Source of the DNA: Takakia lepidozioides
Lineage: Eukaryota > Plantae > Bryophyta
Direction of reading: 5' to 3'
Assembly: GCA_030704615.1 (NCBI GenBank)
Contig: CM060734.1
Location: 31,868,001 to 31,932,000 of the forward strand
DNA length: 64,000 bases
In this document: positions 576 through 43,589 of the stretch, piece after piece
Numbering within the stretch: the stretch's first letter is position 1
Layout of the letters: the number at the start of each line of letters is the position of its first letter
Made by a program: the position numbers and the translations under genes
Notes under the pieces: model-generated
What the model was told of the DNA's origin: nothing
The model's database searches: none
Seen by the model: the letters and a program-made list of their open reading frames with translations, nothing else

Positions 576-990
576 GTGGAGCGCCCGGGGGGTGCACTCC
601 TCATTAAATGTACCAGCCACGTGCGTGCACAGGAGGGGGTATTTTAAACCCCCCCATGTACAACATTATACATACAGAGGGGGGTTTAAAACACCTTAAA
701 TATAATTTTACAGGAGGGGGTTGTTGAGTTTTTAGGGATAATGTAGTGGTAAGAATGGCGATTCCGCCGCGATGCATCCCGGGATCGAATCGTGGAATCG
801 TCGTTTTGTATGTTTGTTTTTTTTTTTTTTTTTTCGCTCCACGATCTTTCTCCCCTGACCTCCCGCGGCTTTCTCTTTTCTTTCTCCTCCTCTCCCGCGT
901 TCGCCTTCCCTTCCGCGGGCTTTCTCTTTTTCCTCCTCTCCTCTCCCCTCCTCTCCACAGGGCATGGTAGGACAATGTGGTGAGGGCACC

Positions 991-3974
991 AGAATGTGTG
1001 AGGGCACTGACTTGGGAGAAGGTTTGAGGTTGTGATGTATGTAGAGGGCAGGAATCAAAGGGGATGAAGTAAGTGCGCGGGAATGTGGGGCAGGCCTGGG
1101 CTGATCGGTGATGATATGCGGGTGTGGTGGCGGATTGTTGTGCAGCAATGACAGGAGGACATGGGCATCAAGATTCCCAGTCATCAGAGTTAATGAGCAC
1201 ATTAGGCCTATTTTCTTTCCTAATAATGATTGGCGTGACACAATGGTTGTACTCACTGTATCAGGCCTATTCTCATCCTTATTGAATCCAAACAGCCAGA
1301 GGGACAAGATGCCCCTAAGTGTACAGAACTTGAACGTCCTGAATCTGAAGGATTTGGTACTCAAGAGTTTACACAAGACGAGCAAAATCTACACATGGGG
1401 TAACTGTCCCCCCTTTGCAGAACGGTTGGGCGTCCAGGAGCAATCCCAAGCTACCTAGACGACAAACAATTCACATGCAAAGGGCTGGCTTGCGGCTGGC
1501 CACTTTCAACTTCTCAGGGCTTACTAACCAAAGGAAACAACTCGAAGTGGGACAAGTCCTTCGGACTAATGATATTCATATATGTGCTGGGCAAGAAACA
1601 TGGGAAACTTCGGATAAACTGGTTGGAGATGTCAATGGTTATAAATGGGCAGGTAGGATGTGTACTCTCAAGGCAGCCTCTGCCAAACGCGGTCAAAAAG
1701 GGGTTGGATTCTTTGTCCGTGATTTCTTGTTTGATAATTGTGAGATTATCAACAAGGGTTTGAGGTACGAACATAGTATCTGGCTAAAACTGAATCTGAA
1801 GGGCGGCATGAGTACGAAGGACCTCTTTGTGGGTTGTGTTTACATGCCCACAGAGGGGACCCTTAGTGCTGACGCAGACAAAGCCTTCGAAGATGTAAAG
1901 CTGGACTGTGCTTCGTTCCTTGCCAAAGGTCAGGTAGTGCTATTGGGTGACTTCAATGCCCGGGTGGGCAAAGGGCTCCATCAGGACGATATCATTGGGC
2001 CTTTTGGTGAGGACGAGCCCTCTATAAAGAGTGCTGCAATTTGAAAACCAACAGAGAATTGTGGGCGAGGTACTATCAGCTCCGGAAAGATATCAATCAG
2101 CTTGTTAGGTCTCAGAAGAAATTATACTGGGATAAGTTATACAGTGAAATAAACTCAAACCACCATGGTGGTAATGACAAGAAATTATGGTTGGCCCTTC
2201 AACGTTTGTACAAGCCTAAAAACGGTTAGCAAGTACAAGCGCTGAAGACTACTAAAGGTGCAGTGGTGACTTCATCGGTTGACATTGTCAAAACCTTTGA
2301 AAATCACTACAGTATCCTTGGCAGAACTTCTAGGTCTAACAGTGAGGGGTCTTCTGCTGAATGGAGGGACACAGTTGGAAAAATTGTTCCTATGATTCAA
2401 AACAGCCCTGATGAACTGGAGTATATTTCAATGGCTTATAACGCTCCCATTAGTTCTTCTGAGATTGTGGAAGCAATTGAACATTTAAATGGATATAAAG
2501 CTGGTGGACCTGATGGTATTGTCAACGAGCTTATCAAGCACGGTGGCGATCCCATGATAGAGGCCCTAGTTCTCCTCTTTAACCTTATCTGGAAGACTGA
2601 AATGATCCCCTTTCGTTGGCGACAGGGGGTCATTGTTAGTCTATACAAGAAGGGTGACAGAGAAGAACCGGGGAACTACCGTGGCATCACACTCAGGAGT
2701 AGATTAATTGCGCGAAGAGATACTTTGATCTTTGGGGGCTAGAGGCTAATGTCAGCAAATGTGCAGTGGTAGCATTCAACGACAGAGGAGAGGGAGGAAG
2801 TGATCTTAAGTGGCAGTGGGGTAGCCAAGAGATCCCGGTCCTCCCTTCCTACACTTACCTGGGCGTTGAGTTTTCCTCCAATTGTAATTGGGATGCACAT
2901 ATCCGGAAAGTTGTTCGAACTGGCAAGGGCAAAGCTCTGGGGCTCACTAAATTTTTCCACTGCAGAGGGGTCATCTCTGAGGTTAAGAAAACCATGCTTT
3001 GTCGCGTTATTAGACCTCCCTTGGAGTACGGATCTGCTATATGGGTTGATAACTCCAACCAGGCTAAGTCTCGAGAATCCATTCAAGTGGGGGTGCTTAA
3101 GGAGTGTATGTCAGCATGCTCCAAAACAGACAATGTGGCTGTTCGGGGTGAGTTTGGCATTCCATCCTTAAGCTCCCGACGAGATGAATTTCAAGGTCAG
3201 ATGGTGGGGTCAGCTGCAACATATGCCCAACACCAGATATCCTAAGTTGATTGACTCTGTATCTTGGAAACATGACCGCCCTGTCAAACAAGCTAAGTCC
3301 TGGCAGAAGAGAGTAGAAAAGATTCTCAAGGACCTGGACCTGGATCCGCAAGTCTTGACCCTGCTGGATAAATCTGCCTTAGAGGCTATAGTGTCTGAGG
3401 CCATGTCTGTTGCCATGAGATTGTCTGATGAAAATGAAGTTAGGCAGAGAACTTCCCTGAACTTGTTTCCAGTCAGTGACATGGGGGTGGACATCTTGGA
3501 TGACCTCAAGGGTCTACCCACTCTCGGCACTAGACTGAAATTTAAACTCAGGGCAGGAAGCCTACCTTTGAACAGCAAACAGAAGCAGAGAGGAAAGGGA
3601 GGGTGCAATTGTCCGTTGTGTGGGCAATACAGTATTCATTTTCTGATACGCTGTCCGGGTTCTCTCACCAAAGAGAGGCTCTCTTCAATTCTATCAAGGG
3701 AATTGTGCCTGTACCCCTGTTTACCAACTTTGAAAGTCTCGAGGCTGAGCCAAAAGCCCAGGCCCTCCTGAGGCCTAGTTTTTGGGCAAATCACACACAG
3801 CAGATTGATGCTTGTGTGAAGGGTTTTCTAGAGGATATCTGGAAAACCCGGATTAATTCCTTATACGATGGTAAGTCTTACTACCAACGTCAGCCCTGTT
3901 CCTTTTGTTCCCACTGAAACTGGGCGCGGGGTCAATGGCCACAAGGCTACGGCAAACAACGTCTTATGAGTACA
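991..3974 (+). mobile_element. Internally deleted non-LTR retrotransposon (APE endonuclease, partial RT, CCHC finger; RTE/RTEX-like)
   Basis: APE motifs LATFN, AGQETW, GVGFFV, VYMP, LGDFNARVG (1415-2044). RT start KAGGPDGI...YKKGD...GNYRGITL (2263-2742). YTYLGV and RPPLEYGSAIW; C-terminal LKFKLRAG...CPLCG..HFLIRC. The RT core (YADD region) is deleted; the 5' boundary is approximate. Confidence 0.88.
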
Positions 3975-4486
3975 ATCTCATCCTTATCATCCCTCGCCTT
4001 TTGGAAAATTCCAGCCATAATTGGTTGTTGTACTTAACTGCACGAATGTTCCATTTTCTGTTGGAATGAGCCGCACGTCCTTTCCATGCTGACATACCCT
4101 TTCTTCTTCCTGCAGGATCCTTTGCCCAGCCCTGTTATTTCTATCATTTGTGCCATCATCTTGGCGTTTCCACAGCCTCCCCTCATTGCCAGTGAAGTGT
4201 TTCTTTCTCTTCCCTTTGTCTTTAAAGACACTCCAACTGTTAGCTGCAGTACCCTTCGCTGATTTCTTATTGCCTTTGACCTCATGTATGTTTTCAATCA
4301 TGTTTGAAGGGTGATCACTTGCTGCCATATGCATGACTGTGTCCTTGACTGCTTCTCTTGTCTCAGTATGATGTTTAATTGTTGTCATGTCAGGCTGTGC
4401 TCAGCTGCACCGTGGTGTCTTCAAATGGATCAATTTTTCAGACACGGTCTTGCCAACTGAATGATGCAGGTTTACTTGGGAGAGTG

Positions 4487-5097
4487 CACTCCCCCTTTCC
4501 TCTCTGCTTCTGTTTCATGTTCAAAGGTAGGCTTCCTTCCCTGAGTTTAAATTTCAGTCTAGTGCCGAGAGTGGGTGGACCCTTGAGGTCATCCAAGATG
4601 TCCTCCCCCATGTCACTGACTAGAAACAAGTTCAGGGAAGTTTTATGCCTAACTTCATTTTCATCAGACAATCTCATGGCAATAGACATGGCTTTGGACA
4701 CTACAGCCTCTAAGTCTGATTTATCCAGCAGGGTCAAGACTTGCGGATCCAGGTCCAGGTCCTTGAGAATCTCTTCTACTAAACACCTTTTGATCTCAGT
4801 CCAGAAAGTGGTCAGAGGTACCAATATCAGTTCTGTCGATCAACACATTGGCACACTGGGGGAACAAATTTTTGTCCATTATGATATAGTCCACAATGGA
4901 ACGTTCCCCAGTTTGGGATTTCTCACGAGTCCACTGCACTTGGTCACCTCTTGTCTTGTTAATCAAGGTCAAAAGCTGAAGCTCTTCCAGACAGTTAATT
5001 AACCGTCTGCCATTAGAATTCAGCTCGTCCTCACCAGAAGACCCAATGATATCGTCCTGATGGAGCCCTTTGCCCACTTGGGCATTGAAGTCACCCT
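4487..5097 (-). mobile_element. Second, inverted deleted copy of the same LINE family (endonuclease end fused to C-terminal region)
   Basis: 4487-4780 is the reverse complement of ~3310-3605 (EILKDLDLDPQVLTLLDKS...LKFKLR). 4796-5097 encodes GDFNAQVGKGLHQDDIIG...NGRRL...VDYII...SDHF. Confidence 0.88.
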
Positions 5098-5109
5098 ACA
5101 ATAGCACCA

Positions 5110-5960
5110 CAGAGATGAAGAGAAGCTTTGGAATGAGACACTTTTCTGACCCCAGTCAATGGTGGGACAATGTGGGTGGATGGTCAACTGGAAACAGCAG
5201 CGGCAACAGCGCAATTGATAAAGCAAGGCACTGCTGATGAAAGGTACCTTCTTCAACGTATTTCAGCCTGAGGGCACCTTCTGGTTTGACCTGTTTCAGC
5301 CTGTTTTTCCCTCTCATCAGACTCAGCCCTGAAGCATATGTATTGAATTCTGTAAGTTAGCTCGTTGGGTGGATCTGCGGTGCTCTGGAGTGACTTTGCA
5401 AGTTGCTGCCGAGGTGGTAGCATGACAGTACCTAAAAAAAGATAATAGATAGAACAAGGGACTGCTAATGAAGGTACCTTCTTCAACACATTTCAGCCTG
5501 TTTTCCCTATTATCAGAGTCGTCCCTAGATTTCCAGATGGCGGATTCCAAGCTCCAGATTACCTATGATTCCATGTGGAATGATAGCTACAAGAAACCTG
5601 GGTAGATGGTCAACTGGAAGCCACAGTAGTAGCTGCAGAGGCATGATGTACGCATTGTTAGTGTGGAGGGAGGGGTAGCTGTTGATGCAGGGAGAGGATC
5701 GTGGGTGCAAAATCATCCAAGAGGGCCAGATTTGGAGCAAGGAACAGCGCTGGCAGGAGTTCTATAAATTTGATCCACAGCGGTGGGACAATATTGTCAA
5801 CAAGGTGAGCTTTCTTCATGCAACATCGTAGGGAGTTTGACAGAACTTTGTATTTAAATATGTTAGTGTGGAGGGAGGGCTAGCCGCTGATGCAAGGATG
5901 GACTGTGGGTTCAGGATCACCCAAGAGGGCTACCAGCAGTGGAAGTAGCAGCATTTGGTC
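5110..5960 (+). other. Captured host-gene fragments encoding OSB-type PDF motifs, inside the P-like element
   Basis: Manual translation: KLWNE-FSDPSQWWDN (~5123-5171), ITYDSMWNDSYKKP (~5558-5600), NHPRGPDL (~5711-5734), QRWQEFYKFDPQRWDNIVNK followed by a GT donor (~5745-5806). Confidence 0.7.
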
Positions 5961-6173
5961 AATAGCAGCAGCAAAAATTAACAACATCAAACTCATCAAT
6001 CAGGTACTTGCTTCTGTATACATTTCATCCTCTTATGAACGTAGTTCCTACTTGGACAGCCTATAGGGTTGTATAAAACAGGACTTTGGAACCTTCCAAC
6101 CCGGGTGCTTTGTTATTGGTCTATCAAGGTCTGATTTGAAATGTTTTCATTGCATTTTGCAGGTGAACTCATC

Positions 6174-9100
6174 ATGGAAGAAGAGTTGGAAGTAAAAGTC
6201 CTGCTTGTTGGAGGAGATGCATCACCAAACAGGCTTGGTTCTGTGTTCACTATGCAAGGTGTCACATACAAATGCATCCGAGCAGAAATTATAGGTGATG
6301 AGCTTGTCTCAGCAAAATTTCATTTCTTTCCATGGGGGGTAGTGTCCTTTCAGCCAAGCAAGAAGAGAGGATGGTTCTGAAAGGGGATACTGTACACATT
6401 AAGATTTCAGACCAAAATGATGGGGACCAAGGATTGAAAAGACCTCTATCTTCCAGTGGTTCTACGATCTTGCATGAGGACAGACCAGGCGAGGACCCGG
6501 CACCAGTGTCTACCAAGATGAGGATGGACCCTGATACACCCTTTGTTGGCGATGGTGGAAATGAAGACCATGCACATGAGCATGCACTTCAGCAGAGATC
6601 TGGTAGATTGTGCAGCACGTTGGCTACATCCAACGATATTCAAAATGGCAGAAAGAGATTAGAGCCGTTGAAAGGAAAATCTCTGCAGAAGGACGATGTG
6701 ACAAGTTTGAGCTGATGACAAAGGATCAACAAGGACAAGCAATGTTCCACATATGGTGTGTTGAGTGTGAGGATGTTTATGCACGGTCTGGGAAAAACAA
6801 ACCATATGATGCATGTGCAAACTTTATGAGATCTCATTTGAGGAGTGAGGGGCATCGCATAGCCTATGAGAGGCGTCATGGGAAGGGTTCATCACAATGT
6901 GTCATCAGCCCTGTAAATGCAGATGAAGCATTAGACGCAAAGAAGAAAAGGGTGAAGGAGGCATTAGAGGAAGTCGCTCGGTTTTGTGAGGACAATCCTG
7001 GAAACAGATTTGAGATTGTGGAAGCCACAATTGGAGACTATTCGCAGTTGGGTTCCATAAGGATTAGGTGCCCACTGGATTCGAAGTGGCTACTCTTGTT
7101 TCCAAGGACAGGTTCTTTGCAATCTTCTTTGACAGAGCATGTGAAAGGAAAAACTCATGTCGATGCAGAGATTTGCCAGAAGGTTGGAAGTAGTGAAGGA
7201 CCTTGCAAAAAGAGAGGAAGGCCTCCAAAGCCTATGATTGCCAAAGATGTAAAGCAACGGGATCTAAGCTCTTTCTTGGTCAGTCAACCTGTGTTGCCGT
7301 CCCCACCACTTGACAATCCAATTGTGGCATCAACAATGGGAGCATCCTCGTCACAAACTCCATACGCTTGTGTTGACGCTGCCCAACGGGGAGATCTGAT
7401 CGAGGATTGACAATTACAGCAAAGGTCCCAATGCAACAAAGGAAGAGACAAGTTTGTGTTGGGGCCTATGGGATGAATGGTGGGAGTACAACCAGCAGAG
7501 AATAAGTCTGAAACCATTCCTTCAAGATAGCAAGGGAGGAAAGAAGTGGTATGTCGAGCCGTTGACAAATGCAACCATCACTCTAAACAATCAAGAGCAT
7601 AAGGTTGTTGGTACGTTTCGGCACGCGGATTGTTTTAGAGTGTCATTGGATGGGGAGCCATTTCCAAACTTGAGATGTTCAGCATGTTCTTCCATTCCCT
7701 TGGAAAATGACTTCAGAATGAGGGTATATAGAGAAAGAGGTGCCATGGAATGTAGAGGGGAGAGAGATACTGGCAAGGGAAGAAGGTTGTCATATCTTGG
7801 AAATGCGGAGATTGTCAAACAAGTTTACAAAAACAGACAGGAGTTGAGGCAGTTGAGGTTCAAATTGTGGGAGGCCAGGACCAAAGTGGCATCATTGTCT
7901 GTGCGATGTAGGAGTTTGAAGGAGTCTGGGATTGAGGCAATTGAAAGAGGAGATGTTCTCAAATTTTGTCGTGATATTGTTGATGCACATAGGAGGGGGG
8001 ATTTTGAAGGAAAAGAAAGTTTGTGGGATTTTCTTGTTGATATGGGCAAGAATATTGACAGGTCTCCACAAGGGAAGAGGTATGGTACTAGCACAAAAAC
8101 AATGTTTGAGACTGTGCAGCTTTGGGGGGGTCCGAGATTGCATCATTTTTTGGCTTCAAATGTGGGGGGTCCTTCTATTGATACTACAAGACGGTCTTTG
8201 AGGAAAGGTTTGAAGTATAGAGCGGGAGAAACGGATGATATATTTCAGCATGTGGCTGGAATTTACAGAGATGTGATGGAAGATGCAAATATTCCATTGG
8301 GAAGCATCCCAGTGATGGTGGCCGAAGATGAAACTGTTGTGAAGCGATTGGTACGTTGGATTGCTAGGGATGACACCCTTCTCGGGTTTTGTGGGCTTCA
8401 AGACAACCATGTATGTATTTCAAATTTTGTGGTGCAAGTGGGAGAAGGGGAATCAGGGTACCAACATATTGTGGAGGCATTCAAAAACAATGTGGTTGCC
8501 CATTATGCTAGAGTGTTGATAGCAAATCCTCTACATGTACGGTTACCTCGATTGGTATTGGTAATCCAGCTCACTTGCAATAGATTTGACAACAATTTTG
8601 TGAGATCACAATGGGAAGTGGTGAGACAGTTGTGGGACAAATATGTGAGGGACGTGGTTGGGCCTATAATTGGGCATGCTTCAGACGGAGATAGTAGGAG
8701 GAGAAAAGTGATGTTAGAAGATTATGCCAATGGGGCTGGAAATAGATTTTGCATCCCTTGGGAAGGATGGTTGTTTACAGGTCGAGTGTGCAACGGGGGA
8801 GATATATACGGACTCCATGATCAGGACTTCATCCACAATGGGAAAAAATTGGTAAATCCCTTGGACAGTGCATCACGGACTTTGGTGTTGGGTGATGAGG
8901 TTGCTACATTGAATCATGTGTTATTGGTCTACCATTCATTTTCAATGGACAAGCATGGACTTCGGGAATGTGATATCAAAAGAGAAGATCGACAGAATTG
9001 GGCAGCAGCTCAACGACTGGCATCTCGGAAGGTGCAAGCTTGTTTGAGGGAGTTACAATCAATGTGAATCATCGAAGAGAGAGGACCAAAGGTACTGAAA

Positions 9101-10584
9101 TTTACCTATACATCATTTCATGCTACATCGACATTTTTTTGTCTCCTCACATGTCATTGTGTGAGAGGGTACAATCTGCTGCGAAGGTATCATTTTTTTT
9201 CAGATTGTGGAAGTTGTGGCTATTCCAGCACGAGGTGTATAATCTGAAATCCTTCTTCATTAGCAGGGAAGCATACTTGGATTTACAAATTTCATGCCAC
9301 TATGTGGTTCTACTTATCAAATTGTTCAAGGATAAGTTTAATCATGTGCAAGTTCCTTTGAGCCTTGTTGGTTCAGATGTGTGTGAAATATTCTTCAGCA
9401 AAGTGGGAGGTATGTCACGGAATGAGAGGACATATGACGGGTGTGATTTGATTGAGAGTGCGGGAGCATTAACACGCATATCCGAGTTCGAGGCGAATCC
9501 AAAAGGACCCAAGTTCTCAATAGCTCACAAGAAACAAGAACACATATGGTCTTCTTTGGAGAAGAAGCCAGGTATCTCCCTTGCTGATTTGTCCGACTTT
9601 TCTACTGTCCAATCAGATGATTGCATTGTGGAGGCTTTGAAAACTGGATTTCTAGAAGCGCAACTTTTATGCCATAAACTTGGGATGAAACCAAACAAAG
9701 CAACAAACTTGGATTGGTGGAATGAGCCATGGACAATTGAGAGACAAATGGAGGTCGAGCTATTCAAAAGCATGGAAGAGGAGGGTGATGATGTCAATGC
9801 CATAGATTCTATTTGTCCTCTTAATGCAGACACACATATTCAAAATGAGGTCGTGGAAGATGAATTGGTGTGCGGGCCTTCGAATTCAATGGAGGATGTT
9901 TTGAGCCAACCTTTGGATGATCATGCGGAAGAGGTACTTGTTCAAAGTGAATTGAGACATACTCTGGATGCTGTCATTGATGAGTTTGAACAAGAGAAAG
10001 ATGGATCGAAGGCAGTGGTTCCATTTGTCAAAGTAGACGGGAAGACCATATTCAAAAGCACTTTGGTTAGCCAACTCAATGGCAACCCTACTCTATCCAA
10101 GGATAGATTGACACGAGTAAGAAGTGCATCGATGTTGTTTTGCCGAGAAAACAAACCAACTACCAGCAACAAAGCCACGAGCTTGGGATTGGGTTCGGAT
10201 TGTGCTGTATTTTTTGTTGATGGGGAGACTGCGATCCAAACTACAAACAGGAAAGGTAGACCAGGAAAAACCTGCAGATGAGCAACCAAAGACACTTGGT
10301 ATTTGGGCAGGGTTCAAAGAATGCGGAAGAAAATCAATAAGCGGTTTGTAGAATGTAGGGATTCTGTTGATTTATTGGAGCGTCATTCTCATATGGAGAT
10401 TGGGTTAGCATGGTACCAAAAAATTCGAGGAGGGGTCTATACGTACGATTTGACGGATAACATGATGGTTGATTTGGATTCCATTATCGCGTTAGCATGT
10501 TTAAAGTACAATGTCAAGTCAAACACATATGTTCTTGATGCAAATGACCGAAAAGTCTTTGACAACTTTATCAAAGGCAAATAA
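6174..10584 (+). pseudogene. Frameshifted P-element/THAP9-like DDE transposase with N-terminal zinc fingers and an AT-hook
   Basis: Consecutive ORFs 6141-6380, 6332-6715, 6610-7410, 7454-9067, 8998-10281 and 10303-10584 appear to be one broken gene. Motifs: AEDETV (D ~8327), ASDGD (D ~8684), QDFIHNGKK (DxxH ~8825-8836), EDRQNW, GSDVCEIFFS (E ~9385). Also CVEC...HLRSEGH and CPLD...HVKGKTH fingers and KKRGRPPKP. Confidence 0.72.
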
Positions 10585-10887
10585 TTTTTTTAATTAATTT
10601 GTTAGATTTTATTATGTTTTAAATGAATAAATTCGATATAATATAAAAACATACATATACATATTGGAGGGTTATTTTTAATGATGAAAAATGAGAATAT
10701 ACATACAGAAGGGGGTACTTTTCGAAAATTGTAAATTTTTGTATCTTTACAGGAGGGGATTTTATAATCTTCAAAAAGTATGTACAGAGGGGGTATAAAT
10801 TATCCAAGGACCCGTATACAGGGGGTTTTTTTATTAGGCGACGAACGCACGTGATACGCACAGTTTATAAAGAGTGCACCCCCCGGG

Positions 10888-12211
10888 GTGGAGCGGTGCC
10901 TCTCCAGAAAGGCGTAAATTTCTTCCCTCGGCTCCGCCACCTATTCGTTGTACCTTTTGATGCTAGCCTGCGAATGACAAGCTAAAACCAGTTGAGCTTG
11001 AGGCATGTTATCTCAGTCGTTGCAACCCCCTCTCGTAAGGCTATAGTTTTGTAAAGTAGCACTGATGCAAGCTATATGACCCTGCCCTCACTCGTGCCTG
11101 GCCATAAGGCCCGAGCAGATCTGTTCCTCCACTCAATTTGAAAATTTTGTAAGGCCGTGGTAAAATATGTCCATGTTGTGAGTTATCCTGCTTGTCTGCA
11201 TCCTCTGTTTCATCCACAACCTCCACACCGCTGCTACCGGCACGCGGCCTTCTGACAAGGGAGGTGTCTTGCACTGCGGCGGTTGTCTTCTTGGGTTTCT
11301 GTTTCCTTTTCCTCTGTTTTTTCGTGGCCACTACAGCTACTTCGGCGGCCTCCTCGGCACCTTCAATGTCTCCATGTGTGTTGGTGCATGCAGCTCGTTC
11401 TTTGTGTATTTCTTGTAAACTTCTGCCTCCCCGTCAGGAATTACATTTGGTGGCAAGTCCAACCACCAATAGTAAGGCAGATGAGTGATTTTGACGTACT
11501 CGCCTAGCTGCTAGCTTCCGTTGTACATTGTGCAGTCAGGCCGCGAGCTAGCCCACTGAGTGACCGTGGTTGGCATACACTTAATATGTTTGTTGGCGAG
11601 CACATAAAAGTTCAGGTATCTGCAAAAGTGCACGACTTGTTAGCGTGCAATGGAAGACTTACATACGTTGAGGGTGTGACTACATAAGCCTTCGCCAAGT
11701 GAGGACGGTTATTTAAAGAATCTACTGCTGTAACCTATAAACGATTCTCCGGCCGGTAAAGTTTGCCCAGGTTGCTTAGTTTTCAGCCAGCTTCGCCAGG
11801 CCCATCATTTATCTTGCACCAGAACATTTCCTCCCAATACTTGAGGCGGTAGACGTCCACCCAGTCTGAGACGAACTTGAGCATCGGTGCCTCTACTGGG
11901 TCGGTAGCTGCAATAAGTTTTTTCCAACCAGCATGGCCAGTTGTCGCTCGGCTTCCTTTTTTTGCTGCAGAGTCCACCAAACATGTCAAAACGCAAGTTA
12001 ATGACACAAACACAAACCTCAAACCAAAACGAGGAATGTACGTTTTTACCTGGAACCACCATGTCATTTTGTCACACCACAAGCCGAACACGACATCTGT
12101 TGGAGCGAGAAGAAATTTCGCGTCTAACCTAGTCTTAGAGCCGGAATTCCAGAGCTTTACCCAGGACACTTTCTCCGCAACACTGACTTTACTAGTGGCC
12201 ATCATCTGCAA
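10888..12211 (-). pseudogene. Upstream degenerate exons of an unknown, probably TE-derived gene disrupted by the P-like insertion
   Basis: Minus-strand ORFs 11783-12211 and 11041-11331 (basic NLS-like ATKKQRKRKQKPKK), GT/AG-like junctions and internal stops. Confidence 0.35.
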
Positions 12212-41309: not shown

Positions 41310-43589
41310 CTAGATACCCTCATGGACTTCGAGGTCCTCGAGGGTCAACATATCATCCTGCGAACCATCATCATCACCCCGATCACTCTCGCCCTCATCC
41401 TCACGTCGCTCACCCTCATCCTCATCCTCACTAGTCTGGCCCTCATCCTCGACATCGGTCACCCTATGGTCAGTAGTGCTACTAGTAATACTTCGTTTTT
41501 TTGTACTCTTTGCGGAGAGGGCCCTATGGGTCTTGATGCGCTCAAGAAGCGGGGGGTATCCTTCATTCTTGACAAATTCTACCTCCTCCACGCTTGGGTG
41601 TCTCCCAAACCTACGATGCTACACAATCACAAACAACCTTAATTAGTTTATGCAAGATATACCAAAGAGATAACCATATGTAGACAAAGCAACACATTAA
41701 AGTGAATGCATCCATGAAATGCTTACAAATCGGGTCGCGAATGACTTGTGCCCTCCTGGACCAAACTTGTGGGTGCGGGTATCTAGCCCTTTCCCTTTGC
41801 GTAATGTGGCCGCCTCACGACCCCTAGCAAATTGAGCCTTCTTCTTGGCATCAGTCTCCTCGGCAATGAGAATGTCCCATGACTCCTAAACAACCAACCA
41901 CTACATTAGCTTTACTTCTTCAAGCATGCATGCATCATTAACATCTTCCACATGTCCAAAATACAATGAATGAAATAGGAAGGAAGGTGTGGAGTTCATA
42001 CCTCACTGATAATGGCTTTGACACCGTTCTTCGCTGCTTGCCGGATCTCCTTCCTTGCACGATATCGCCTATCCTTGAGGTTCTTTCCGATCAACCCCAT
42101 CAAGCGGGACTCACTCCAACCACCCCCAAACTTCTTCTCCAATTCGGCTACAAATCCCTTACGGTGCTCCCATGGTTGTTGATCCCAATCTACATGCAAA
42201 GAGAACCATCATGCCGCTTTTGGAAAGCCTCCTAAACGCTTCCCAAAACTCTCCAACTGGATACCCATACTTGTTGGCCTCTAGAGGTGGGACCTTCTTA
42301 GGCACCTCCAGCCCTCCCTTCTTCCCTCTCCTCCCGCGCTTACGAGGCTCTCCTTCTACTGAACCCTCTCCAATATCTCCCTTCCCACTACCCTCCCCCA
42401 ACTCTCCGACTGTGAGAGGGGTATCCTCAATGCAAGGCTTCTTCTTCTTCTTCTTGCTAAGGGGCTTTTCCACTATCTTTGGTTTCCCTCTTCCCACAAC
42501 AGCCTCAACCTCCTCCATCTCTCTCTCTCTACGTCTCTCTCCGGCTCCCTCGGCAATGACCAGAGGTCTCTCAAGGGACGTGGCACCGGGTCCACAAATG
42601 GAGCCTGCAATTACAATGGGTTTTGTGAGGCCCTTGGCCAATCTCTGCAAGTCATGTACATGTGCAAACCAAATAAAAACAACAAAAACAAAAAGAATGC
42701 AGTAGGCAATACAACAAAATGGCGAGAGAGATACTGGCCTCATGATGCTCCGAGGTGATTGTATCCCTGGGCTTGAGCGCGGGCATCTCAGGCACCTCGA
42801 GTTCAGGTGCCAAAAGTTGTCCCATTGATGGCAATGGAACCCCCATTGCCGCCAAAGATGCCATGAGTTGTGCTTACTCTTCAGGAGAGGCTTGACCCCA
42901 ACTGCCACTAGCTAGAGTCACAGCAGCGAGCTGGCCAAATGCGAGGCCCTTCCTGGCCGAGGACTGGCCACCTATGGAGGTATCATGGACATGAGCAGGA
43001 GAGGTGCCTTGGGTACCATGAGATACATCATGCCATGAAGAACTTCCCAATTTTTCAACAGGAGCATCATTTGGGCCAAGCGGCCTAGCTACCTCCCCAC
43101 GTATGGGACACCTCTCCACCCCCTCTCTCTCTCTCTCTCTTGTGCATTGATCAGCAAATCCCGTTGACATGTCATAACCCTCCTAACCTCGGTGGTTGGA
43201 GAAGCACCGGGAGCAATGTCCAATTGGCCCATCCTAGGACCATCTTGAAAAATCTTTATATTACCCGTATACAATGCTTCTAATGAAGGAGAGAGGGTAG
43301 CGCTAGATACTGCAGGCCCAATGGTGGACTCATCAATAGTACCAGTAGTATCCGGCACAAGAGCCACTTCAACTACAACACCTTGGCCCAAGAGGGGGGC
43401 ATCATCATCAACACGGTGCTCGGGGGGGGCACTGGTACTCTCGGGCTCATGAAATGAAGGAGCAAGCACAAGAGGAGGGGAAGGCCGGGGGGTCAAACCA
43501 GATTTCTTTCGTGTACTTGAGCGATATGGGTTTGTTTCTGGTTTTTTCCTTTTCTTTGCAGCAGGGGTCTTCTCCGAATCCTTGGCCAT
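41310..43589 (-). pseudogene. TnpA-like (Ptta/En/Spm-type) CACTA accessory gene, spliced and frameshifted
   Basis: Exon translations MAKDSEKTPAAKKRKK..., VDWDQQPWEHRK...GKNLKDRRYRARK, ESWDILIAEE...RTHKFGPGGHKSF, and an acidic C-terminal tail. Confidence 0.55.

What the first reader, a model, noticed from the sequence alone, without database searches (positions are those of the whole stretch)
584..10887. P-element-like DNA transposon with atypical CCCGGGGGG termini in a land-plant genome
Seen: perfect 16-bp TIRs, an exact 8-bp TSD, and D..D..DxxH..E motifs (AEDET, SDGD, QDFIHNGKK, DRQNW, GSDVCEIFFS). Established: an 8-bp TSD and D(2)H / (Q/S)DxxExFF motifs characterise P/THAP9 transposases. 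P elements are not a standard part of land-plant TE catalogues, and canonical P termini start CA, not CCCGGG. Inference: a distinct P-related lineage. The intact TSD and TIRs beside a broken transposase suggest trans-mobilisation by a functional copy elsewhere.
Basis: partly seen in the sequence, partly recalled or inferred. Interest (0 to 1): 0.8.

Follow-up and report, generated by a model that had tools for sequence, protein, structure and literature searches.

The report
Decayed P-element-like transposon in a land plant
This is a real but broken 10.3-kb cut-and-paste jumping gene whose enzyme folds like the fruit-fly P-element transposase; its family is widespread in liverworts and ferns, and plant transposon lists and Pfam-based screens miss it.

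Summary
There are perfect 16-bp inverted termini (584-599 / 10872-10887), an exact 8-bp target duplication GTGGAGCG (576-583 / 10888-10895), and all the quoted motifs.

The transposase footprint is larger than stated, about 6628-10584 out of a roughly 1,500-aa protein. It is broken by at least two frameshifts and one in-frame stop.

No Pfam family matches it. A confident AlphaFold model of an intact natural homologue matches the Drosophila P-element transposase at Z 24.5 (rmsd 3.4 Å over 372 residues). Transib scores 11, RAG1 10 and Hermes/hAT 8. ESM-Atlas neighbours carry THAP9/TNP-like domains.

Kolobok is excluded by its TTAA duplication and RR/YY ends. No Pfam match to KDZ/Zisupton, hAT or MULE was seen.

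Intact relatives elsewhere (1,423-1,528 aa, single ORF) share the CYCGGGGGG ends, 8-bp duplications and a CACGTGCG box about 34 bp from each end.

The family lacks a THAP domain. It has C2H2/BED-like zinc fingers plus an AT-hook at the N-terminus and a probable BAH-like chromatin-reader domain at the C-terminus.

Named land-plant sequences form one clade that includes this copy. Formal membership of the P superfamily by phylogeny is untested, and trans-mobilisation is not needed to explain the data.

This scan had already found the same family twice on other DNA of this genome (s1-459453, s1-469989).

The parts
576..583 (.). Left copy of the 8-bp target-site duplication, GTGGAGCG
   Evidence: identical to 10888-10895
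584..599 (+). Left terminal inverted repeat, CCCGGGGGGTGCACTC (similarity to the right end continues to 626 at 79%)
   Evidence: It aligns with the termini of intact relatives L001 and L005
618..625 (+). Left subterminal CACGTGCG box, 34 bp from the end; candidate transposase-binding site
   Evidence: It sits at the same offset at the right end and in L001, L005 and L007. The binding role is inferred
626..725 (.). Left subterminal G-run repeats (ACAGGAGGGGG / TACAGAGGGGGG type)
   Evidence: D2, I8, I9
1415..2041 (+). LINE apurinic-endonuclease fragment; foreign to the element
   Evidence: Pfam Exo_endo_phos, E 1.4e-6
3312..4780 (.). Pair of 296-nt inverted repeats (3312-3607 and 4485-4780, 94% complementary) in the rearranged 5' part
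   Evidence: I1; origin not resolved
4796..5096 (-). Second LINE endonuclease fragment, in the opposite orientation. It forms the 74-nt inverted repeat with 1945-2018
   Evidence: Pfam Exo_endo_phos_2, E 7.1e-5
6628..7287 (+). Transposase remnant, N-terminal part (frame 1): two CxxC...H(4)H zinc-finger modules and an AT-hook-like KKRGRPP
   Evidence: tblastn to residues about 158-385 of full-length relatives; alignment A3
7454..9058 (+). Transposase remnant, middle part (frame 2): Cys-rich module, coiled coil, helical DNA-binding region, and the RNase H N-half with D (8327), D (8684) and D(2)H (8825-8836)
9061..10584 (+). Transposase remnant, C-terminal part (frame 1): the rest of the helical insertion domain, the catalytic E (9385-9387, within DVCEIFFS), the C-terminal region, and a BAH-like domain at about 10177-10551. 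An in-frame stop lies at 10279-10281
   Evidence: The BAH-like fold comes from the homologue model
10745..10830 (.). Right subterminal G-run repeats
   Evidence: (D2)
10846..10853 (-). Right subterminal CACGTGCG box, 34 bp from the end
10872..10887 (-). Right terminal inverted repeat; exact reverse complement of 584-599
10888..10895 (.). Right copy of the 8-bp target-site duplication, GTGGAGCG

Best explanation
The stretch 584-10887 is one insertion of a cut-and-paste (class II, TIR) DNA transposon. Its transposase belongs to a P-element-related lineage that is widespread in seed-free land plants.

Shown: the element has 16-bp perfect inverted ends and an 8-bp target duplication. It encodes the remains of a roughly 1,500-aa transposase. 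The catalytic core of that family (an RNase H-like fold with D, D, D(2)H and E, and a large helical insertion domain before the E) has the same fold as the Drosophila P-element transposase. The copy is dead: it has at least two frameshifts and one stop, and LINE fragments sit in its 5' part.

Inferred mechanism, by analogy with P. N-terminal zinc fingers and an AT-hook bind the conserved CACGTGCG boxes 34 bp inside each end. A coiled coil pairs the subunits. The DDE site cuts the ends, so the transferred strand ends in G as in P, and joins them to target DNA cut with an 8-bp stagger. Repair of that stagger gives GTGGAGCG on both sides.

The C-terminal BAH-like domain may steer insertion towards particular chromatin. 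Whether the insertion domain binds GTP, as in P, is unknown.
For: Ends and duplication.

Family: 70 and 147 homologues at E values down to 1e-232, none carrying a transposase Pfam domain. Named members come from Riccia, Calypogeia and Adiantum, and also from Aurelia and Amphiura.

Fold:
- The AlphaFold model of homologue P0026 has pLDDT 80.8 and pTM 0.80.
- Foldseek against the PDB puts P transposase 6p5a_A first at E 1.6e-8, probability 1.0. Hermes follows at 0.027.
- VIA-align gives 6p5a_A Z 24.5, rmsd 3.4 Å over 372 residues (model 1-467 against chain 168-566). Transib scores 11.0, RAG1 9.8 and Hermes 8.2.
- The ends of the aligned ranges fit model E432 pairing with E531 of P.
- ESM-Atlas neighbours are THAP9-like clusters carrying PF21787, PF21788, PF21789 and PF12017.
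- One homologue matches PF21787 over the first-D region at E 2.6e-4.

Conservation: the catalytic residues are nearly invariant across the family and are present in the window.

Family-level cis features:
- Two 99.86%-identical intact copies, L001 and L002, have CTCGGGGGGG ends and exchanged 8-bp flanks.
- A second lineage (L004-L007) has the same kind of ends.
- Seven termini align in two conserved blocks.

Plant clade: support 99.
Against: - No Pfam TNP-like or P family reaches its threshold in the window pieces or in more than 70 homologues. The best score is 21.7 bits against a cut-off of 24.6.
- A profile of the family finds no P transposase among PDB sequences, so the link rests on structure.
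- There is no THAP domain.
- The termini are not the CA...TG of P.
- Kolobok, Dada, MuDR and KDZ have no solved structure, so the fold match cannot rank P against them.
- The fold was computed on a homologue that is 51% and 36% identical to the window's two pieces, not on the window's own broken protein.
- The binding site, GTP use and chromatin targeting are all inference.
Confidence: 0.8

Rival explanations
1. The family is not P proper. It is a separate superfamily-level branch, or a Kolobok relative, within the group of transposases that share the C/DxxH signature (hAT, P, MuDR, Kolobok, Dada). It looks like P only because P is the nearest solved structure.
For: There are no Pfam P-family hits above threshold. 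The N-terminus is not a THAP domain. The termini differ from those of P. The best-matching Atlas cluster is an unannotated Basidiomycota cluster (row 1). Kolobok and Dada have no solved structures to compare with.
Against: Kolobok makes TTAA duplications and has 5'-RR..YY-3' ends (PMC9587614). Here the duplications are 8 bp and not TTAA, and the ends are 5'-CC/CT..GG/AG-3'. Z 24.5 over 372 residues, including the insertion domain, is a close match. Atlas neighbours with names are THAP9/TNP-like. The only Pfam hint is to the TNP-like family.
Confidence: 0.13
2. It is a hAT, Zisupton/KDZ or Mutator-like element. These superfamilies also give 8-bp or similar duplications.
For: hAT and Zisupton make 8-bp duplications (PMC12730594). 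The C/DxxH signature is shared. Some structural neighbours come from Basidiomycota, where KDZ elements abound.
Against: Hermes scores only Z 8.2 at rmsd 7.7 Å, against 24.5 for P. No hAT, MULE or KDZ Pfam family appears in scans of 25 and 46 homologues at E up to 0.1 and 1. The Basidiomycota clusters carry no common Pfam family, whereas KDZ proteins have their own Pfam models.
Confidence: 0.03
3. History of this copy: it was already defective when it inserted and was moved in trans by an intact relative, and did not decay where it sits.
For: The ends and the duplication are perfect while the gene is broken. The 5' part holds about 4.7 kb of foreign DNA compared with the 0.85-kb leader of intact relatives. 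Earlier notes of this scan report other copies in the genome, one with a roughly 1,470-aa transposase (unchecked).
Against: Only 48 bases need to have stayed unchanged. At a few percent divergence that is expected, while a 4.4-kb ORF would collect several disabling changes. No second copy sharing the same lesions was examined.
Confidence: 0.3

Closest known systems
Drosophila P-element transposase (PDB 6P5A/6PE2) and the P superfamily (P, 1360, Galileo, THAP9)
   Same: - 8-bp target duplication and short inverted ends with internal binding-site-like boxes.
[quoted passage not shown]
- The D(2)H signature and a DxxExFFS-type E motif.
- A coiled coil upstream of the core.
- A fold match of Z 24.5.
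- The element starts with C, so the transferred strand ends in G, as in P.
   Different: - No THAP domain; C2H2/BED-like fingers and an AT-hook stand in its place.
- About 120 residues lie between the first two D residues, against 73 in P, and they hold a conserved C/H/C cluster.
- The protein is about twice as long and has a C-terminal BAH-like (or, in some relatives, Tudor) domain.
- The termini are CYCGGGGGG, not CATGATG.
- It scores below every Pfam TNP-like threshold.
- GTP dependence is unknown.
Kolobok superfamily
   Same: A DDE transposase with the C/DxxH signature, considered close to P, hAT and MuDR (PMC9587614).
   Different: Kolobok makes TTAA 4-bp duplications and has 5'-RR..YY-3' ends. 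Neither is seen here.
Zisupton / KDZ
   Same: 8-bp duplications, large transposases with Cys-rich N-terminal modules, and presence in Basidiomycota.
   Different: No KDZ Pfam match in any scanned homologue. The structural neighbours that have names are THAP9-like, not KDZ.
hAT (Hermes)
   Same: 8-bp duplications, an insertion domain, and the C/DxxH and ExFS-type motifs.
   Different: A weak fold match (Z 8.2, rmsd 7.7 Å), no hAT dimerisation domain, and termini that are not of the hAT type.
Chromoviruses (Ty3/Gypsy elements with an integrase chromodomain)
   Same: A mobile-element enzyme fused to a histone-reader-type domain at its C-terminus. This is an analogy for targeted integration.
   Different: An unrelated enzyme and element class. 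Reader function here is only suggested by fold: Z 7.2 to the plant BAH readers AIPP3, EBS and SHL.

Membership tests
P superfamily | 7-8 bp target-site duplication | tested here: met
   GTGGAGCG lies on both sides of the window element. L001 and L002 carry the 8-bp flanks GCTTTGAG and TGTAAAGG, exchanged between the two copies.
P superfamily | Catalytic core with the fold of P transposase: a split RNase H domain with a helical insertion domain before the E | tested here: met
   6p5a_A scores Foldseek E 1.6e-8 and VIA Z 24.5 at 3.4 Å over 372 residues. The next folds score Z 11 or less. Atlas neighbours carry PF21787, PF21788 and PF21789. The test used homologue P0026, not the window's broken protein.
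P superfamily | D, D, D(2)H, E signature | tested here: met
   AEDET, SDGD, DQDxIHNGKK and DxCExFFS are nearly invariant across the family and present in the window.
P superfamily | Sequence membership: Pfam TNP-like/P models above their gathering score | tested here: not met
   The window pieces give no hit. The best score among more than 70 homologues is 21.7 bits, against a cut-off of 24.6, for PF21787. A family profile finds no P chain among PDB sequences.
P superfamily | [quoted passage not shown] | tested here: not met
   Eight full-length proteins show no THAP domain in Pfam. The N-terminal model shows no THAP-like match. The alignment shows CxxC...H(4)H fingers and an AT-hook in that position. 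A review states that THAP domains are restricted to animals (PMC7776569).
P superfamily | GTP as cofactor, bound by the insertion domain | not testable with these tools
   The insertion domain superposes on that of P, but no residue-level alignment or assay was available.
P superfamily | Placement within the P clade in a transposase phylogeny | not tested
   No reference P, Kolobok or Zisupton sequences were obtainable through the tools. The tree built here covers this family only.
Kolobok | TTAA target duplication and 5'-RR..YY-3' termini | tested here: not met
   The duplications are 8 bp and not TTAA, and the termini are CC/CT..GG/AG. The criteria come from PMC9587614.
Zisupton/KDZ | KDZ transposase domain (Pfam) | tested here: not met
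   No KDZ family appears among the matches of 25 and 46 homologues at E up to 0.1 and 1. The 8-bp duplication alone is shared.
hAT | Hermes-like fold and the hAT dimerisation domain | tested here: not met
   Hermes scores Z 8.2 at rmsd 7.7 Å, against 24.5 for P. No hAT Pfam domain was found.
BAH domain (C-terminal module) | BAH beta-barrel fold and a sequence match | tested here: inconclusive
   Model residues 701-853 match AIPP3, EBS and SHL BAH domains at Z 6.5-7.2, rmsd 2.8-3.3 Å, over 83-87 residues. Foldseek gives weak hits to the DNMT1 BAH region. One of 46 members hits Pfam BAH at E 3e-5, and two carry a Tudor domain there instead. The Atlas feature search was blank.

The most novel reading that the evidence does not exclude
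Seed-free land plants harbour an old branch of the P-element superfamily that Pfam cannot see and that is still active in some species. In this branch the animal THAP domain is replaced by C2H2/BED-like fingers that read a CACGTGCG box. A histone-reader domain (BAH, or Tudor in related lineages) has been added, and it directs insertion into particular chromatin.
Probability: 0.3. Interest if true: 0.75.

Novelty: new variant of a known kind. Interest (0 to 1): 0.6.

Why it matters
A 2022 review lists six TIR superfamilies in land plants, and P is not among them. A 2025 survey of 1,007 plant genomes screened for P with Pfam models and reported none. This family shows why: it has the P fold but scores below every Pfam threshold.

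If the placement holds, three things follow:
- The P superfamily extends into land plants as an old, diversified clade covering liverworts, ferns and this genome.
- Pfam-based plant transposon surveys have a systematic blind spot.
- Intact, apparently recently active natural elements become available to test whether GTP dependence and the P mechanism are ancestral, and whether a fused BAH or Tudor reader guides integration.

Tried and rejected
- Pfam scans of the window's pieces and of more than 70 homologues gave no transposase family above threshold.
- Profile searches of PDB sequences gave only coiled-coil noise (Vipp1/PspA).
- The 74-nt inverted repeat at 1945-2018 / 5023-5096 looked like a nested TIR element. 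It lies inside LINE endonuclease coding sequence in two orientations, so that reading is rejected.
- The third terminus-like match at 43419 has no partner and was not pursued.
- Short-read contigs L004-L007 give the termini, but their two flanks do not match. I take these contigs as repeat-collapsed assemblies and did not use them as evidence on the duplication.
- The N-terminal model gave only weak matches, Z 6.2 or less.
- The Atlas feature search of the C-terminal domain was blank.
- A literature search by guessed Repbase names was useless.
- Yuan & Wessler 2011 and Bao et al. 2009 are not held in the library.
- Accessory ORFs downstream of the transposase in relatives have no Pfam match.
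- Its 150-row list would probably also be filled by close family members.
Its pieces were searched apart, and folding was done on intact natural homologues.


Full report
**Observation**

The left end at 584-599 reads CCCGGGGGGTGCACTC, and 10872-10887 is its exact reverse complement. The 8 bases outside each end are both GTGGAGCG (576-583 and 10888-10895). The repeat finder extends the inverted similarity to 43 nt at 79%. With up to three mismatches the 16-mer is expected 0.30 times in the window. Three matches were found, and no shuffle in 100 reached that number. A perfect 16-bp inverted pair abutted by an exact 8-bp direct repeat is far beyond chance, by my arithmetic about 0.3 x 1/65,536.

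**The gene**

Full-length relatives of about 1,500 aa map onto 6628-7287 (frame 1), 7454-9058 (frame 2) and 9061/9076-10572/10581 (frame 1). The footprint is therefore about 4 kb, larger than the 7454-10281 first given. It carries a frameshift between 7281 and 7454, another at about 9059-9060, and an in-frame stop at 10279-10281. They were searched apart, and folding was done on intact natural homologues.

The 5' 5.5 kb of the element is much longer than the 0.85-kb leader of intact relatives. It holds two LINE endonuclease fragments in opposite orientation (1415-2041 on the + strand and 4796-5096 on the - strand). These explain the 74-nt inverted repeat. It also holds a 296-nt inverted pair. 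The copy is dead.

**What the protein is**

Pfam finds nothing in the window's pieces. The word search finds 70 relatives of the middle piece, with E values down to 1e-232 and at most 61% identity, and 147 relatives of homologue P0026. Almost none carries a Pfam domain. The named ones come from the liverworts Riccia and Calypogeia and the fern Adiantum. More distant ones come from the jellyfish Aurelia and the brittle star Amphiura.

An AlphaFold model of P0026 (865 aa, covering the core and C-terminus) was built from a 46-row alignment and is confident, with pLDDT 80.8 and pTM 0.80. P0026 is 51% and 36% identical to the window's two pieces.
- Foldseek against the PDB puts the Drosophila P-element transposase first, at E 1.6e-8 and probability 1.0. 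Hermes follows at 0.027, and RAG1 and Transib near 0.1.
- VIA-align gives P transposase Z 24.5 at rmsd 3.4 Å over 372 residues (model 1-467 against chain 168-566). Transib scores 11.0, RAG1 9.8 and Hermes 8.2.
- The range ends fit the family's E (P0026 E432) pairing with E531 of P. D230, D303 and E531 are the catalytic residues of P, and its GTP-binding domain is inserted between beta5 and alpha4 (PMC7776569).
- In the ESM Atlas the structural neighbours are THAP9-like clusters carrying PF21787, PF21788, PF21789 and PF12017, together with unannotated Basidiomycota clusters.
- One Adiantum homologue matches PF21787 over the first-D region at E 2.6e-4, scoring 21.7 bits against a cut-off of 24.6.

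The D, D, D(2)H and E residues are nearly invariant across the family. In the window they map to 8327, 8684, 8825-8836 and 9385.

**Rivals**

- Kolobok makes TTAA duplications and has RR/YY ends (PMC9587614). Neither is seen here.
- Zisupton makes 8-bp duplications (PMC12730594), but no KDZ, hAT or MULE Pfam family appears in any scan.
- Hermes fits poorly.
- What cannot be excluded is that the family forms its own branch beside P, not inside it. Kolobok, Dada, MuDR and KDZ have no solved structures, sequence profiles do not reach P, and I had no reference sequences for a cross-superfamily tree.

**Family-level cis features**

The intact relative P0076 (1,423 aa, one uninterrupted ORF) occurs twice on one 1.26-Mb contig, in 7.74-kb elements that are 99.86% identical. 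Both start CTCGGGGGGG and end CCCCCCCGAG. One copy is flanked by GCTTTGAG on the left and TGTAAAGG on the right, and the other by TGTAAAGG and GCTTTGAG. The two copies lie inverted about 55 kb apart. Exchanged 8-bp duplications are the signature of an inversion by recombination between two insertions, the same logic used for P-family elements in PMC3698922. This shows 8-bp duplications and recent activity in the family.

A second lineage (P0075, 1,479 aa, 14 contigs) has CTCGGGG(A/G)GG ends. Seven termini from three elements align in two conserved blocks: CYCGGGGGG..CAcT at the tip, and a (C)ACGTGCG box about 34 bp inside. In the window that box lies at 618-625 and 10846-10853. Internal boxes at a fixed distance from the ends recall the transposase-binding sites of P. 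That these boxes are bound by the transposase is inference.

**Architecture**

Alignment of full-length proteins shows, before the core:
- a small N-terminal domain;
- two CxxC...H(4)H modules;
- a GRP AT-hook;
- a further Cys-rich module;
- a coiled coil.

The window's 6610-7407 ORF keeps the fingers and KKRGRPP. Pfam finds no THAP domain. The N-terminal model (pLDDT 71) gives only weak matches, Z 6.2 or less: a C2H2 finger of the U1/TUT type, and coiled coils.

At the C-terminus, model residues 701-853 match the plant histone readers AIPP3, EBS and SHL (BAH domains) at Z 6.5-7.2 and rmsd about 3 Å. One family member hits Pfam BAH at E 3e-5, and two relatives carry a PTM/DIR17 Tudor domain at the same end. 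The window keeps this region at 10177-10551, at 35% identity to P0026. A chromatin-reader role is plausible but untested.

**Phylogeny within the family**

In a FastTree tree of 47 rows, all named land-plant sequences and the window's copy fall in one clade with support 99. The Aurelia and Amphiura rows fall elsewhere. The window's nearest rows are unnamed sequences at 63% identity, next to Adiantum lineages. The intact elements (L001, L004) belong to a second plant sub-lineage together with Riccia. The conserved ends therefore span the plant clade. The root is a midpoint root only, and no donor or direction of transfer can be inferred.

**Literature**

A 2022 review of land-plant transposons lists six TIR superfamilies: Tc1-Mariner, hAT, Sola, MuDR, PIF-Harbinger and CACTA. 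P is not among them (PMC9033089). A 2025 survey of 1,007 plant genomes screened 17 superfamilies, including P by Pfam models at E below 1e-5, and found active elements in seven, none of them P (PMC12973397). This family would be invisible to that screen. My searches found no paper linking the P superfamily with Marchantia, Physcomitrella or Selaginella. Repbase and Dfam themselves could not be queried.

**Earlier notes of this scan**

The same family was reported twice on other DNA of this genome. One note (s1-459453) describes the same CCCGGGGGG ends, an 8-bp duplication and a roughly 1,470-aa transposase. The other is s1-469989. These are unchecked AI notes. My fold result was obtained before I saw them and agrees with them. 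They imply that the family is multi-copy here, which bears on the trans-mobilisation idea but does not test it. Other notes suggest the genome is the moss Takakia. I did not verify that.

**Verdict**

This is a real, dead copy of a P-element-like cut-and-paste transposon. It is a new variant of a known kind: it has the P fold and the 8-bp duplication, but a non-THAP DNA-binding region, different ends, an added BAH-like domain, and no recognition by Pfam. Confidence is 0.8 that P is its closest characterised relative. Formal superfamily membership awaits a cross-superfamily phylogeny.

Noticed in passing
L001:9139-16895 and L002:9140-16894 (ENA ERZ25073694, ctg132431, about 55 kb apart, inverted): Two intact 7.74-kb copies, 99.86% identical, carry exchanged 8-bp flanks (GCTTTGAG/TGTAAAGG against TGTAAAGG/GCTTTGAG). 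The segment between them was probably inverted by recombination between the two insertions.
   Followed up: partly
window 1415-2041 (+), 4796-5096 (-), 3312-3607 / 4485-4780: Two LINE endonuclease fragments in opposite orientation and a 296-nt inverted pair (94%) sit inside the element's 5' part. Whether they are nested insertions, a rearrangement or captured DNA was not resolved.
   Followed up: partly
window 43419-43434: CTCGGGGGGGGCACTG resembles the terminus of the second plant lineage (the L001 type). No inverted partner was found in the window. It could be a solo or truncated end, or chance.
   Followed up: partly
window 5110-5960: Direct repeats with units of about 205-230 bp (families D3, D6, D8, D11) lie just upstream of the transposase remnant. 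Another first-stage note (s1-447920) calls this a cargo shared with a CACTA element 40 kb away.
   Followed up: no
P0145, P0146 (relatives; C-terminal residues about 1160-1217): Some distant family members end in a PTM/DIR17-like Tudor domain (E 1.6e-8) where the plant members have the BAH-like domain. This suggests repeated fusion of chromatin-reader modules to this transposase.
   Followed up: partly
L004:6877-7455 and the same ORF in L005-L007: A 192-aa ORF downstream of the transposase is conserved in all four contigs of the P0075 lineage. It has no Pfam match and may be an accessory gene. The window's element has only about 300 bp after the transposase.
   Followed up: partly
P0026 residues 92-154 (family alignment A2): A nearly invariant C92, H98, C100 and C154 cluster lies between the first and second catalytic D, inside the roughly 46 extra residues this family has there compared with P. 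It may be a zinc site within the RNase H domain.
   Followed up: no
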